A stretch of 63,164 nt of DNA, the filler included, from Choristocarpus tenellus KU-1152 (Eukaryota; Protista; Phaeophyceae), in NCBI GenBank assembly GCA_964200185.2. It is 13 parts of 13 records of this genome, joined end to end, with 100 filler letters (N's around TTAATTAATTAA, not from the genome) between each part and the next. Parts side by side here need not be neighbours in the genome. Positions count along the whole stretch, not along the records: positions 10,613 to 15,717 come from CAXNAD020011856.1; 12 more parts are not named here. One strand, 5' to 3'. Positions within the stretch are counted from its first letter, which is position 1. Every line of letters starts with the position of its first letter. Of this stretch, positions 10,019 to 15,717 are shown piece after piece. Under the pieces are notes generated by a model. That model was given only the letters and a program-made list of their open reading frames with translations. It searched no databases and was not told the DNA's origin. Made by a program: the position numbers and the translations under genes.

Positions 10019-10632
10019 TTCCCGTTAAATAACAATGTTACATTTCTGCGTGATGATGAAGTAGGGACCGATTGACGATGCACTACTTTGTCCTCTCTAC
10101 TTGGAGGGACGAATCATCTTCACATGTTGTTGATAAAATGGTGAGTGATATCTACAAATCGTGTGTACTTGTACTTGGTAACCGACAATGCTATATCAAC
10201 AACTTATCGAGAGTTGCACAGCATTCCTCAACGGTGGATTGTATAGTCGGTGCATGATTTGTGGTGCAATGAATCTCGTCGGAAATGTTTTTTTAAGTCC
10301 TTGGCCGCTCCTTCAACCTCTTCGTACAATTTTTTTTTTCACATTTTTGTCATCGTCCACTAACTCATCAAGCAAGAACGACTTGCTTCATGATAGTGGA
10401 CTGGCTTTTGTCAATTTGTTGAGTTTTAGGTTTTCCATTCCTGACAGGCGTATGTATGCATGTGATGTAATTTGTGGGAAGATGTGAGCCCTCGGTGTAG
10501 CGATTCCCCCCCNNNNNNNNNNNNNNNNNNNNNNNNNNNNNNNNNNNNNNNNNNNNTTAATTAATTAANNNNNNNNNNNNNNNNNNNNNNNNNNNNNNNN
10601 NNNNNNNNNNNNGTACATCCGAATACCAACAA

Positions 10633-10803
10633 GAAGTGGGGGGGGGGGGGGGGATCTGCACCAGTTTGACCATTTAGGTCAAAACCAGGAAACGTGCACT
10701 TACATTATACATCGGACGATGCAACCAAATCACCCAAAAATTGCAAGAAGAAAAAATTGGCCCCAAATTGACATCCGCCACCCCCTCCCAGATACTCTGA
10801 GCC
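10633..10803 (-). mobile_element. MITE family B, reverse copy with one degraded end
   Basis: Ends CCCAGATACTCTGAGCC; interior is the reverse complement of the family B consensus; left boundary approximate. Confidence 0.8.
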
Positions 10804-10913
10804 ATCGTGGAGGGTATCTTCTGAATGAGGCTAAGGTGGAAAGCAGATAAGTATTCCCTTGTAGCATCTTCCAAATGACTTTAAAGACTAGAAGTCAAGG
10901 AAGTTTTTATCAC

Positions 10914-13900
10914 CTTTGGTCGCTTAATCTTCTTACGGAAGATCTTGAGGAGAGTATCATGGAAAACAGTGACGTCTGGTACCAGATCATTAAATTTTGT
11001 CATCACCTCCTCCTCCTTCTCCTGCCAGATCTGCATGCAGTCGACCAGAAAATTGGATTTTGGTAAAGGCAAGAACTTGACTTGATGTATTTCACTCTAT
11101 CAGACAGAGATAGGGTGGACAGAGACAGAGACCCAGTGCACACACTGGGTCTCTAAAACCATAACCATAACATTCTCATAACCATACCTGCAAGCTTCCA
11201 CACACTAGAAATAACTGTTTTAGAGATTGGAGACCATCTCTACTCTGTGCATCTGATATTAGGACAAGCAGGCGCTCAATATGTGCGATGATAATCTTAT
11301 GTGGGTGCAGAGGAAGAATTGGATAATAAAATAGCGATATAGAGATGTAAACATTCTGTTTGCCAGAGAGGGGTGCACACATTAACACACAATGCAGCTC
11401 CGACCTCGTTGTCGTGTTTATTAGGAAGTGCCAATATCCATGTTCCGGATACACCTTTTCATAATTTGCACATTTTACCTACTCCGCAACATTTTGGAGT
11501 AAGAAAATGTCATTAAAAAAACCTGTTGAAGCCAAGTCCCAAATGGACAAACAGGGCAAAACTCCTACCCTCTAAGATGCTTTCACTCAGAGGTTTGCGC
11601 TGAGTGCTAAGAGCCCTTGCAGAGATGGTGCAAAACTTTGTGTAGGAGAAACCTAGTCGGCCAGTACTATATCACCACACCAGGACGATAATAGGTAAGA
11701 GCTAGCAATAACAATGTACTTCAAAGTCTGCACTTCAGCCTAGCTTAAAGAAAACAATCAACTAGAATCCACACATCTATAGCAAGTGGGAAAGATAAGA
11801 GAGGAAAGTACTCCAGGCGCGACCCATGGTGAAATTGTAGGGTAAATCGGTCCTGAATGAGGTTTCTGGGAATTATAGAGAGGCAACAAGAGTCATGGTA
11901 GAGTATATTTCATCCCCACCTCGGCTTCTGCCTGTTTTGCGCCAAGCTTGCTCTGGCAAACGTTGATGGAAGTTACGACCTCTTTCTTTTCAGCGCTCTT
12001 CTTCTCTTGCTTCTCGGCCAAGCCGGCATCCTTGGCATCAAATTGATGAAGAAGATCGAGTTCCTTCGCTCAATGAAAGAGAGATGGAGGGAGAATAAGT
12101 TTTTGCAAGAGATACCTGCTTGGCAGAGTGAAGGTTATGAGACTTCATCATATTTCAATCAAACTTGTTGTCATTAGCAAGATATTGATGAGGCTTTTAG
12201 CAACTGGTGAGTGAAAGTATCTTAGAGGGTACCAATTTTGTCCTGTTTGCCCATGTGGGGCTTGGCTTCCCATGGGTTTTTATTGATATTTTACCTACTT
12301 CAAAATGTTTCGTAGTAGGTAAAATGTATACGTTATGAAAAAGAGTGTCCAGACAAGGATATTGACATCTCCTAACAAACATGATAGTCAAAATTACACC
12401 AAAATTGCGACATTGGATTTTGGTCTCCAAACGGACGCGGCTGTACCCTCTAAGATACTTTAGTTCTGGTGTCTTTGACAAAAAGCTATGAATACGGCAG
12501 CAAATTCTCAGAGTGGTTCCCCAGTGCGCCCTGAGTGGAGTGTGCCCAGGAATTCAACAACTTCACCTTCATGTATAGGCTTACACGACATTAAGGACGC
12601 TGCCTGGTTGGCCCCTTGAAGAATAATCTATTGAGATAATCTTCTCCCACAACTGTTGATGGCCACTGTAGCGATGAGATAATCTCATCCTTACGCAGGA
12701 GACACATGGTGCTTGGGACTCTGTCTCTGTGCTGCACCACAAAAAAATGAAACATTTCCTTATAATTGCTATAATGTTAAGGAGATTCGTTTCTATACAA
12801 TGAATGGATTCTAGTGACGTATTTTATGGCAATAGAATCACAGCCAGAGTATCTTAGAGGGTAGAGCCACGTCCACTTGGAGGCCAAAATCCAATGTTGT
12901 GATTTCGATGTAATTTTGACTATCTTGTTTCCTGAGAAGTGTCAATATTCTTGTTCGGGACACACCTTTTCATGACATACACATTTTACCTACTGCACAA
13001 ACATTTTGGAGTAGGAAAATGTCAAAAAAATGTCCATGGGAAGCCAAGCCCCAAATGGACAAACAGGGCAAAACTCGTACCCTCTAAGATACTTTCACAC
13101 ATCACCTCATCCATCTAGACTTATCAATGGAAATACCAGACCAACACCATCACATGTACTTCTCCATCTCGTGTAATTCAGCTCTGTGATACAAGTGGTA
13201 GTTAGTGCACATACTAATAATCATACATGAGTGAAAGTATCTTAGAGGGTACGAGTTTTTCCTTGTTTGTCCATTTGGGGCTTGTCTTCCCATTGGTTCT
13301 ATTATGACATTCTTCTAATCCAAAATGTTTAGGAGTAGGTAAAGTGTGTATGTTGTGAAAAGGTGTGTCCAAAACATAGATATTGACACTTCCTAACAAA
13401 AACAACAGCCAAAATTACATTAAAATTGCAACATTGGATTTTGGTTCCCAAATGGACACGGCTCTACCCCCTAAGATACTTTGGCTCACATTGTTGTCAC
13501 TTCCAACACAACCACCTATCATTGCCCACTTCAAATTCTCCTGCATCTCCGGGGGATACCTCACACTCCAGCACACTTGCATGCACTTGGCACCCTCCAT
13601 TTTTGAGGGATTGTCTTCTTAACTGAAGCATTCGTAGCTACGTTGGCATCTGAAATCGTGGACTCAAAACACCACATGTGGTATTATTCCCCTACATGCA
13701 CTCAACAAACAGGATCTCCCATAAAAAAACTACACACCTGCTTCAAGACTAGCAACTTCAGCTCGGCTGCCTTCAGGTTGGTAGCAGTGAGCATGCGCTC
13801 CCTGCGTAGGTCATACACTGCCTCATCAAAAGCAAGGACATTCTCAGCTGTTTTTTCTAGCAGGGCTCTCCTCTCATGCCGGAGCAACATATGCCTCGCT

Positions 13901-15380
13901 GCTTGTTCCTACAGACACATATAGATTAGACAAACATAGATAACATACATGGACAGATTGGAAGTGCTGAAGGAGAAATGCTGATTGAAAAGGTTTGTTA
14001 GTAAGGACCAGACAGCATAGAGTATGCTGTGTATGGGGGCAGGTAGAAGGGACGAAGATGGTGAGGATCTTCATTGAAACGTTTAGCCAACACATTGACA
14101 GGACGATAAAATAATGAATAAATTGGTACTTCACAATTTACCAAAACTTCAACAACAGATTTGTTTGTCTTGTTATCCTGCTAACCGCCGTTTTTTTCAG
14201 CATGGTAGCTGCGATATTGATATTGACTGGCCAATTCTCCATCAGAGTTTCACCTCAGGCTCAAAGTATCTGGGGGGGGGTGGCGGATGTCCATTTGGGG
14301 CCAGTTTTTTCATGTCGCGATTTTTGGGTGATTTTGTTCCATACGTTGGATGGATAATGAAAGTGCACTTTTCCTGATTTTGGTCCTAATGGACACTCTG
14401 GTGTAGACCCCCCTCCTCCCCAGATACTTTGGGTCCTCAATATATACTTGAAAATTGATTCCCAACAAAACAAACGAAGAGAGCTCTAGGGACAGTTATT
14501 AGTACAGGGACAACTGAAGGAAGCAACGGATAAAAAGGGGGGTCCACAATAGGGGTGTGGGATTGGAAGAGCTAGATTGAAGGATTGTGTGGGGTATGAG
14601 TCGGATGCAACGCAGAAACAGTGGTGGCAAGGGAGGGAGAGGATTGGTGCTTGTTCTAAGAAAGTGGAATGCAATGTCCGTGTGCAGTCAAATTTCTGCT
14701 GCAGGGCTTTACAGAGTGAGTTTTTTGCTAGGGAGAAAGAGTCTTCAGACTAGATGAGGGACTGTAGAACAGACTGGGGAATGAGATATGTATTGATCCT
14801 ACAGTGATGGATTTACTTTAGTATTTTGGACTCATCGTATTGATCACACACAACAAAAGGGTTGATCCACCTGCATCCTTTGTGATACACATGTTGTTAA
14901 TATTCTATTCCAACTCTGAAATTCAGGGGGAAGCAAGTCGGGTCTAAGATCTCGGTGGATCCCTCAATTGATAAGGGATGGAACCCGTCCAACAATGATG
15001 ATCACAGCACTTTGGATGATATACCAATGGATTATTTTGATAATAATACTAAAGTACTTGTATTCAAGTAACTTTTCTCGTATATTCTGCCACAAATAAT
15101 GCTAATGGTGAAACGTTTCTTGCAGGCCAAACTCCCATTGTGTCTCTGGTCCTTATCCCTTCCCCACCTCTTCTTCCAGAGCACTAGGCTCCCCCTCTGT
15201 TGGTCCCTTTGCCCCCAATGCTGCTGGAAGTCGCCCAATGACGCCTTCCACATCCTTCACCATGTGAAGTGCCTCTCTCCATGCCACTTCCATTCCTGTA
15301 CCCACTGCCGCCTCAGACTTTTCACCGACCTTTGATCTAGCTGCTTGTTTCCCCCCACAGTCTCCAGGTATGAAAGAGTC
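10914..15380 (-). CDS. CFAP44: Cilia- and flagella-associated protein 44 (WDR52), C-terminal coiled-coil exons (~15380-15168, 13908-13738, 12063-11920, 11030-10914)
   Basis: Phase-0 splicing gives PSALEEE|EQAARHMLLRHERRALLEKTAENVLAFDEAVYDLRRERMLTATNLKAAELKLLVLKQ|ELDLLHQFDAKD...KQAEAE|IWQEKEEEVMTKF...LLKIFRKKIKRPK, which matches my recollection of the CFAP44 tail (FD..LR.E..LK..L.QEL.LL.F; KIFKKKIKR). The 5' boundary of the first exon is uncertain. Confidence 0.8.
11418..11588 (-). mobile_element. MITE family A, partial copy in a CFAP44 intron
   Basis: Ends ACCCTCTAAGATGCTTTCACTC; the other end is missing. Confidence 0.85.
12209..12466 (+). mobile_element. MITE family A, full intronic copy
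   Basis: Both TIRs present; 4-bp TSD TGGT (12205-12208 and 12467-12470). Confidence 0.95.
12841..13100 (-). mobile_element. MITE family A, full intronic copy
   Basis: Both TIRs present; TSD ATCA (12837-12840 and 13101-13104). Confidence 0.93.
13229..13487 (+). mobile_element. MITE family A, full intronic copy
   Basis: Both TIRs present; TSD ACAT (13225-13228 and 13488-13491). Confidence 0.95.
14258..14435 (+). mobile_element. MITE family B, full intronic copy
   Basis: GGCTCAAAGTATCTGGGG...CCCCAGATACTTTGGGTC; TSD CTCA (14254-14257 and 14436-14439). Confidence 0.95.
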
Positions 15381-15573
15381 TACTCTTGAGGGAACAGTTT
15401 ATTTACCATGAGGAGGTGTAAGAGATGGTGTGTGGCAATCCTGATATTGCTTGTGTACAGTATTGCAACTTCTCATATTCCCATTAGGCAGTCAAATTGT
15501 TGCAAGATATAGTCTGTTGATATTCACAAAGCAGTAAAATGCTTCTGTGATATAAGGCATTAGCAAATGACAT

Positions 15574-15717
15574 GGGTCAAAGTATCTTGGGGGGGGGGGG
15601 GTATCGGCGTCCGTTTTTCACCCTTTTTTCGATTTTCCCTTTTTTTGTGTGATTTGGTCGCACATGTCGGATTTTAAAATTAAGCAAAAAAAAGGGTTGT
15701 TTGGTCGAAACGGACGC
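15574..15717 (+). mobile_element. MITE family C (GGGTCAAAGTATC terminus), cut by the contig end
   Basis: Shares the TIR core and GTCC box with families A and B; the same terminus occurs at 19210-19229 and, reversed, at 19405-19417. Confidence 0.65.

What the first reader, a model, noticed from the sequence alone, without database searches (positions are those of the whole stretch)
12209..14435. MITE ends with a 12/23-rule-like asymmetry: bipartite TIRs whose spacers differ by one helical turn
Seen: each end has a terminal block (G-nnnn-AAAGTATCT), a spacer and an internal box GTCCATTTGG. In family A the box starts at position 31 from one end and 41 from the other in the copies at 2956, 12209, 12841, 13229 and 50016; the others give 40/31 (16860), 30/41 (44972) and 42/31 (30801). 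Family B has an unrelated interior and different G-rich spacers but shows 32/42 (14258) and 31/43 (24196); the 3322 copy gives 31/51. Spacer length is therefore kept while spacer sequence is not. Known: heptamer-spacer-nonamer ends differing by about one turn define V(D)J RSSs and some Transib/RAG-like transposons, which start CAC and make 5-bp TSDs. These elements start with G and make 4-bp TSDs. Inference: a different DDE/D superfamily may have independently evolved obligate short-end/long-end pairing.
Basis: partly seen in the sequence, partly recalled or inferred. Interest (0 to 1): 0.85.

Follow-up and report, generated by a model that had tools for sequence, protein, structure and literature searches.

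The report
MITEs with one-turn-offset asymmetric ends
These are small non-coding transposons in the introns of a flagellar gene of a brown-alga-like genome; a conserved 10-bp inner motif sits 10 bp further from one tip than from the other, as in the fly P element, but nothing here shows that a short end must pair with a long end.

Summary
Three full family-A copies (about 259 bp), one truncated A copy, one full and one decayed family-B copy (178 bp), and one cut B-like copy (C) all share the same end layout. Each end has a terminal G, four variable bases, AAAGTATCT, a spacer, then the box GTCCATTTGG. The spacer is 16 or 26 bp in A and 17 or 27 bp in B, so the box starts at 31/41 and 32/42. All four complete copies have perfect 4-bp target duplications.

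- Constancy within family A is simple descent and has no statistical power.
- A and B are not independent. Their short ends are colinear, including a shared 25-mer 54-79 nt from the tip.
- The C copy has a 21-bp spacer at its short-type end.
- No further copies could be retrieved from any collection, so symmetric copies could not be sought.
- Ends of this kind are already known. The P element has 9 versus 21 bp between its inverted repeat and a 10-bp transposase site and is explicitly compared with RSSs. piggyBac has asymmetric ends that are required in cells.

The superfamily is unknown because no transposase is present; the 4-bp duplications fit Sola best. This is probably an ordinary new MITE group with P-like asymmetric ends. 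An enforced spacer rule remains possible but untested.

The parts
12209..12466 (+). Family A copy A1, 258 bp. Long end on the left (box position 41, mutated to GCCCATGTGG at 12249-12258); short end on the right (box GTCCGTTTGG at 12427-12436, position 31). TSD TGGT at 12205-12208 and 12467-12470.
12841..13100 (-). Family A copy A2, 260 bp, inverted. Short end on the left (box at 12871-12880, position 31; outer base C); long end on the right (box at 13051-13060, position 41). TSD ATCA at 12837-12840 and 13101-13104.
13229..13487 (+). Family A copy A3, 259 bp. Long end on the left (box at 13269-13278, position 41); short end on the right (box at 13448-13457, position 31). TSD ACAT at 13225-13228 and 13488-13491.
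11410..11588 (-). Truncated family A copy A4. Only the long end survives (tip at 11588, block AAAGCATCT, box at 11539-11548, spacer 26). About 82% identical to A3 over 180 bp.
14258..14435 (+). Family B copy B1, 178 bp. Short end on the left (box at 14289-14298, position 32, G-rich 17-bp spacer); long end on the right (box GTCCATTAGG at 14385-14394, position 42, 27-bp spacer). TSD CTCA at 14254-14257 and 14436-14439.
10624..10803 (-). Decayed family B copy B2, 83% identical to B1. The short end is intact (tip 10803, spacer 17, box GTCAATTTGG at 10763-10772). The long end has lost its tip block and carries a G16 run (10638-10653), so its tip cannot be placed.
15574..15717 (+). B-like copy C, about 70% identical to B1 and colinear with it, cut by the edge of the piece. 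The short-type end has a 21-bp spacer (including a G13 run) and box variant GTCCGTTTTT at 15609. The second box (reverse complement) lies at 15706-15715, and the other tip lies outside the piece.
12389..12413 (.). Third conserved block, a 25-mer 54-78 nt from the short tip of A1. Its counterpart in B1 is at 14312-14336 (55-79 nt from B's short tip), with 21/25 identity. It is partly kept in C.
13738..13908 (-). Host exon of a CFAP44-like gene. The next exon is at about 11920-12069. Copies A1-A3 fill about 47% of the intron between these two exons; the other copies lie in neighbouring introns.

Best explanation
These are non-autonomous cut-and-paste DNA transposons (MITEs) of one lineage, with family A and the more closely related B and C. 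They are mobilised in trans by a transposase that is not in this piece.

Shown:
- Small size, no coding capacity, tips 5'-G...C-3' and 4-bp target duplications.
- An imperfect inverted repeat of about 24 bp whose conserved core is positions 6-14 (AAAGTATCT).
- A second conserved 10-11-bp box (GTCCATTTGG[G]) in inverted orientation at both ends, 10 bp deeper at one end.
- A further conserved block at the short end only.

Inferred: the architecture works like the P element. A catalytic or tip-binding part of the transposase contacts the tip block, and a separate sequence-specific DNA-binding domain contacts the box. The 10-bp difference keeps the box on the same face of the helix relative to the cleavage site, so both geometries can be bound. 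The two ends are therefore structurally distinct left and right ends.

The asymmetry was most likely present once in the common ancestor of A and B, probably in the autonomous parent, and was inherited. It probably makes the two ends functionally non-equivalent, as in P and piggyBac. A strict spacer-length pairing rule is not demonstrated.
For: - Anatomy, duplications and spacings.
- No Pfam domain in the ORFs that cross the elements and no homologue of the 94-aa ORF spanning A1. No tRNA or Rfam match, so these are not SINEs.
- Between A and B the tip block is 9/9 identical and the box 9-10/10, while the tip bases 2-5 and the spacers differ. This is the pattern expected of two protein-contact blocks.
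- The short ends of A and B are colinear: block at 6, box at 31/32, 25-mer at 54-78/55-79. The local score of 30 exceeds the maximum of 24 reached in 300 shuffles. This indicates common descent in the same orientation.
- Precedents: the P element has a 31-bp inverted repeat plus a 10-bp internal transposase site, with 9-bp versus 21-bp spacing (PMC7776569). piggyBac LE35/RE63 asymmetry is needed in cells (PMC7351741). Transposase binding to subterminal motifs of a MITE has been shown for Emigrant/Lemi1 (PMC1636448, title and abstract).
Against: - No transposase or autonomous copy was found, so protein contacts and the superfamily are inferred.
- Only two families have both ends visible, and they are related, so the conserved offset is effectively one or two observations.
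- Copy C has a 21-bp spacer at its short-type end. This could be slippage or a homopolymer assembly error in its G13 run, or real tolerance of other lengths.
- The 9-mer flanking the box at the long end of B matches the one at the short end of A. This crosswise match conflicts with the simple short-to-short homology and is unexplained.
Confidence: 0.55

Rival explanations
1. One reading: a true 12/23-like rule. The transposase synapses only one short-spacer end with one long-spacer end. Spacer length, not sequence, is what is selected, and this evolved independently of RAG/Transib.
For: The offset is exactly 10 bp in both A (16/26) and B (17/27) although the spacer sequences differ, and B is +1 at both ends. 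Comparable asymmetry matters for function in P and piggyBac (PMC7776569, PMC7351741).
Against: - A and B share descent in the same orientation, so the offset need not have been maintained twice.
- Within-family constancy has no power: 2-3 indels per about 258 columns predicts about 0.4 in the 42 spacer columns.
- Copy C has 21 bp at a short-type end.
- No test for symmetric mobile copies was possible.
Confidence: 0.15
2. Frozen accident. A single indel of about 10 bp at one end of an ancestral element was tolerated, perhaps because a whole helical turn preserves phasing, and has been passively inherited. The two ends are interchangeable and symmetric elements would move equally well.
For: A and B share ancestry. 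C shows that spacer length can drift. The long spacer of A holds a box-like string at position 32, where the short-end box sits (7/10 matches in A1, 6/10 in A2 and A4), which hints at a small tandem duplication.
Against: The box-like string is no better than composition-matched shuffles (0.17-0.68 of shuffles reach it). In the transposons tested experimentally (P, piggyBac), structurally asymmetric ends turned out to be functionally required. The short end also carries an extra conserved block, so the ends differ in more than spacing.
Confidence: 0.25
3. The box is not a binding site. It is only the best-preserved remnant of a once longer inverted repeat, and it looks conserved because the families are related.
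For: Sequence beyond the box also shows patchy similarity between ends and between families.
Against: The box is 9-10/10 identical between A and B, and the tip block 9/9, while the bases between and beside them are near random. B and C, at about 70% identity overall, still keep GTCC.TTT at the homologous place at both ends.
Confidence: 0.08

Closest known systems
Drosophila P element ends (P superfamily, THAP-domain transposase)
   Same: A terminal inverted repeat plus a separate 10-bp internal transposase-binding site. The distance between the two differs between the ends by about one helical turn (9 vs 21 bp) and has been explicitly likened to 12/23 RSSs (PMC7776569).
   Different: P makes 8-bp target duplications, has 31-bp perfect repeats starting CATG, and its offset is 12 bp. 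Here the duplications are 4 bp, the tips are G...C, the repeat is imperfect and about 24 bp, and the offset is 10 bp. The transposase is unknown.
piggyBac ends (LE35/RE63)
   Same: 4-bp target duplication. Short terminal repeat and internal repeat arranged with different spacing at the two ends. The asymmetric pair is required for transposition in cells (PMC7351741).
   Different: piggyBac inserts strictly at TTAA and starts CCC. Here the duplications are TGGT, ATCA, ACAT and CTCA, and the tips are G...C. The piggyBac length difference is much larger than one turn.
V(D)J RSSs and 12/23-type Transib inverted repeats
   Same: Two conserved blocks separated by spacers of poorly conserved sequence that differ by about one helical turn (PMC8355894).
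   Different: RSS and Transib ends start CAC, use a heptamer and a nonamer, and Transib makes 5-bp duplications. None of this is present here. The pairing rule is demonstrated there and not here.
Sola superfamily (DDD transposase, 4-bp duplications)
   Same: 4-bp target duplications with variable terminal sequences (PMC10741241). A published Sola1 MITE repeat also contains GAAAGT and GTCCATTTT in the same order (PMC3845634).
   Different: Sola1 targets AWWT, which none of the four duplications here fits. The spacing of the shared strings differs. No transposase is available to test membership.

Membership tests
MITE (non-autonomous class II TIR element) | Small size, terminal inverted repeats and flanking target-site duplications | tested here: met
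   178-260 bp. Imperfect inverted repeats of about 24 bp. Perfect 4-bp direct repeats at all four complete copies.
MITE (non-autonomous class II TIR element) | No coding capacity; multiple diverged copies | tested here: met
   No Pfam domain above threshold in ORFs crossing the elements, and no protein homologue. There are 7 copies or fragments in 5.1 kb at about 70-84% identity.
Transib / RAG-like (RSS-type ends) | Termini start CAC (heptamer CACAGTG-like) with an A-rich nonamer | tested here: not met
   Tips read G-N4-AAAGTATCT. There is no CAC and no heptamer or nonamer.
Transib / RAG-like (RSS-type ends) | 5-bp target-site duplication | tested here: not met
   All four duplications are exactly 4 bp.
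Transib / RAG-like (RSS-type ends) | Obligate pairing of a short-spacer end with a long-spacer end | not testable with these tools
   This needs a genome-wide census or transposition assays. Read-based and collection searches gave nothing.
P superfamily | 7-8-bp target duplication; THAP-domain transposase | tested here: not met
   The duplication is 4 bp. The transposase is absent from the piece, so the THAP part is untestable.
piggyBac | Insertion at TTAA; termini CCC...GGG | tested here: not met
   Duplications are TGGT, ATCA, ACAT and CTCA. Tips are G...C.
Sola | 4-bp target-site duplication | tested here: met
   The definition is from PMC10741241.
Sola | DDD transposase of the Sola type; for Sola1, an AWWT target | tested here: inconclusive
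   No autonomous copy or transposase was found. The four duplications do not fit AWWT (PMC3845634), which argues against Sola1 but not against other Sola groups.
Ginger | Termini 5'-TG...CA-3' | tested here: not met
   Tips are G...C with variable bases 2-5. The definition is from PMC10741241.

The most novel reading that the evidence does not exclude
A DNA-transposon lineage of a brown-alga-like stramenopile (4-bp duplications, G...C tips, superfamily unknown and possibly new) has a transposase that assembles only on one short-spacer end plus one long-spacer end, measured by helical turn. This would be a convergent 12/23-type rule outside RAG/Transib, and it would be readable directly from MITE populations.
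Probability: 0.15. Interest if true: 0.6.

Novelty: new member of a known kind. Interest (0 to 1): 0.35.

Why it matters
If spacer length were truly enforced, these abundant MITEs would be a natural population-scale experiment on how transposases tell left ends from right ends. They would also be a further convergent example, beside RSS/Transib, P and piggyBac, of asymmetric synapsis. As it stands, the piece documents an apparently undescribed MITE group in a brown-alga-like genome. The group has a clean bipartite end structure and heavy intron loading of a flagellar gene. That is useful for repeat annotation and as a handle (tip block plus box) for finding the autonomous element.

Tried and rejected
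- Block-gap-box pattern scans of metagenome, prokaryote-genome and viral collections gave 16, 13 and 23 hits. All were unpaired and had no similarity to the MITEs. The one loose 'pair' (L043) is phage coding sequence. The exact family-A repeat found nothing in viral contigs.
- I used the 94-aa ORF that spans A1 as a protein query to fish out other copies. It had no candidates.
- I fetched about 95 kb of CFAP44 loci from relatives (L017-L020, L057, L058). They hold no A, B or C copies, and their introns do not align, so no empty-site comparison was possible.
- Origin of the long end by tandem duplication of the box: the box-like string at position 32 of A's long spacer is not above shuffled controls.
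- Nested-insertion origin (an inner element bounded by the boxes): rejected, because there are no direct repeats flanking the boxes (read).
- SINE or structured RNA: rejected, with no tRNA or Rfam match.
- Searching papers for the motif strings gave only unrelated primers.
- Bao et al. 2009 (tried by DOI and by PMC id) and Yuan & Wessler 2011 (by PMC id) are not held.
Full report
**What is there.** The piece (10613-15717) is eukaryotic, about 43% G+C. It carries exons of a gene on the minus strand. One exon (13908-13738) has splice-like borders. It finds homologues at up to 88% identity, including a 687-aa model with a faint CFAP43-type coiled-coil Pfam hit. Longer relatives are named CFAP44 by several sources. 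The nearest named species are the brown algae Scytosiphon and Ectocarpus and the ochrophyte Chrysoparadoxa. Three further exons align to the relative's locus L020. The host is therefore a brown alga or a close stramenopile relative, and the elements sit in introns of its CFAP44 gene.

**The elements.** Repeat finding and alignment define seven copies or fragments:
- Family A: A1 12209-12466, A2 12841-13100 (inverted), A3 13229-13487, and truncated A4 at about 11410-11588. They are mutually 80-84% identical.
- Family B: B1 14258-14435 and decayed B2 at about 10624-10803 (83%).
- Copy C, from 15574: about 70% identical to B1 and colinear with it, cut by the edge of the piece.

The four complete copies are flanked by perfect direct repeats of exactly 4 bp (TGGT, ATCA, ACAT, CTCA). 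In every case these repeats begin five bases outside AAAGTATCT. The tips are therefore 5'-G...C-3' (C at one tip of A2), with bases 2-5 variable.

ORFs that cross the elements have no Pfam domain, and the 94-aa ORF spanning A1 has no homologue. There is no tRNA or Rfam match. These are MITEs.

**The observation.** tabulates every end.

| End type | Spacer between AAAGTATCT and box | Ends seen |
|---|---|---|
| A short | 16 bp | 3 |
| A long | 26 bp | 4 |
| B short | 17 bp | 2 |
| B long | 27 bp | 1 |

The offset is 10 bp, about one helical turn. The block-plus-box arrangement is specific to these elements. It does not occur elsewhere in the piece. In three large public collections it appears only as sporadic, unpaired chance matches with evenly spread gaps.

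**How much the spacing evidence weighs.**
- Within family A the spacing is simply inherited. The three full copies differ by only 2-3 indels in about 258 columns. About 0.4 indels are therefore expected in the 42 spacer columns, and seeing none says nothing.
- The only informative comparison is between families. From A to B the tip block (9/9) and the box (9-10/10) are kept. Tip bases 2-5 and the spacers are largely different, and both spacers are one base longer. That pattern fits two protein-contact blocks held at constrained distances.
- A and B are not independent, however. Reading inward from the short tip, both have the block at 6, the box at 31/32, and a shared 25-mer (21/25) at 54-78 and 55-79. 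The local alignment score of 30 exceeds the maximum of 24 reached in 300 shuffles. The block is partly kept in C.
- The short ends are therefore homologous, and the asymmetry was most simply present in the common ancestor.
- The claim of an 'unrelated interior' is accordingly not quite right.
- One observation cuts the other way and remains unexplained. The 9-mer directly after the box at B's long end (ACCAAAATC) is the one found 2 nt after the box at A's short end. The 15 nt after B's short-end box resemble those after A's long-end box (10/15). Neither match is strong on its own (one search gives a score of 18 against a null 95th percentile of 20).
- Copy C has 21 bp at its short-type end. 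The excess lies in a G13 run, so slippage or a homopolymer assembly error may explain it. It could equally mean the length is not strictly fixed. Its other tip is outside the piece. The long end of B2 has lost its tip block and cannot be measured.

**Attempts to enlarge the sample.** All of them failed.
- The MITE ORF found no relatives.
- About 95 kb of orthologous loci from relatives contain no copies, and their introns do not align.
- The family-A repeat is absent from viral contigs.

The decisive question is whether mobile symmetric copies exist. It could not be addressed.

**Mechanism.** The best reading is a P-element-like architecture. A tip-proximal block is contacted by the catalytic assembly. 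A separate 10-bp box is bound by a sequence-specific domain and sits one helical turn deeper at one end, so that it keeps the same rotational setting. An extra conserved block is present at the short end only. Together these make the two ends distinct left and right ends. Staggered 4-bp cuts at the target give the duplications. The anatomy is shown. The protein contacts, the need for both end types and any length rule are inferred.

The idea that the long end arose by a small tandem duplication of the box was tested and is not above chance. A nested-element origin is rejected because there are no direct repeats around the boxes.

**Comparison with known systems.**
- P elements have 31-bp inverted repeats and a 10-bp internal transposase site, spaced 9 bp at one end and 21 bp at the other. 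The review itself calls this reminiscent of 12/23 RSSs (PMC7776569).
- piggyBac has asymmetric LE35/RE63 ends. Only the asymmetric pair supports both excision and integration with the native transposase in cells (PMC7351741).
- Some Transib families carry 12/23-type repeats (PMC8355894).

End asymmetry outside RAG/Transib, even asymmetry of roughly one turn, is therefore established. Membership in those families fails on duplication length, target and tip sequence. Among superfamilies with 4-bp duplications, Sola fits best (PMC10741241). A published Sola1 MITE repeat even contains GAAAGT and GTCCATTTT in the same order (PMC3845634). However, the Sola1 AWWT target is not seen here, and no transposase is available, so the superfamily is undetermined.

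**Verdict.** It rests on effectively one or two related data points, and its concept has known precedents. I rate it a new member of a known kind (MITEs or transposons with asymmetric bipartite ends), of moderate interest. There is about a 15% chance that a genuine spacer-length pairing rule is at work.

Noticed in passing
window 10880-15305, minus strand: The host gene is a CFAP44-like flagellar gene. Its exons are about 75-88% identical in protein to brown-algal or ochrophyte homologues. All seven MITE copies lie in its introns. The intron between exons 13908-13738 and 12069-11920 is about 1.67 kb, and three A copies make up about 47% of it. The corresponding intron in relative L020 is about 0.5 kb and holds no such copies.
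   Followed up: partly
window 10638-10653 and 15589-15601: Long homopolymer G runs (G16 and G13) sit inside the spacers of the B2 and C copies, against G9 or an interrupted G run in B1. These tracts change the tip-to-box distance. They could reflect slippage or assembly error.
   Followed up: partly
window 12288-12325 (and the homologous place in A2-A4): Family A has a central near-palindrome: 18-nt arms, 89% complementary, with a 2-nt loop.
   Followed up: no
window 12389-12413, 13410-13434 and 14312-14336: A third conserved block (ATTTT.G.GT.ATTTTG-like) lies about 55-79 nt from the short tip in A and B and is partly kept in C. It has no counterpart at the long end and may be an additional end-specific binding site.
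   Followed up: partly
window 14395-14403 versus 12416-12424, 12884-12892 and 13437-13445: The 9-mer directly after the box at the long end of B equals the one 2 nt after the box at the short end of A. This crosswise similarity conflicts with the short-to-short homology given by the 25-mer and is unexplained.
   Followed up: partly
PMC3845634 Table 1: A published insect Sola1 MITE inverted repeat contains GAAAGT and GTCCATTTT in the same order as the tip block and box here, at different spacing. This may be coincidence or a hint of Sola affinity.
   Followed up: no
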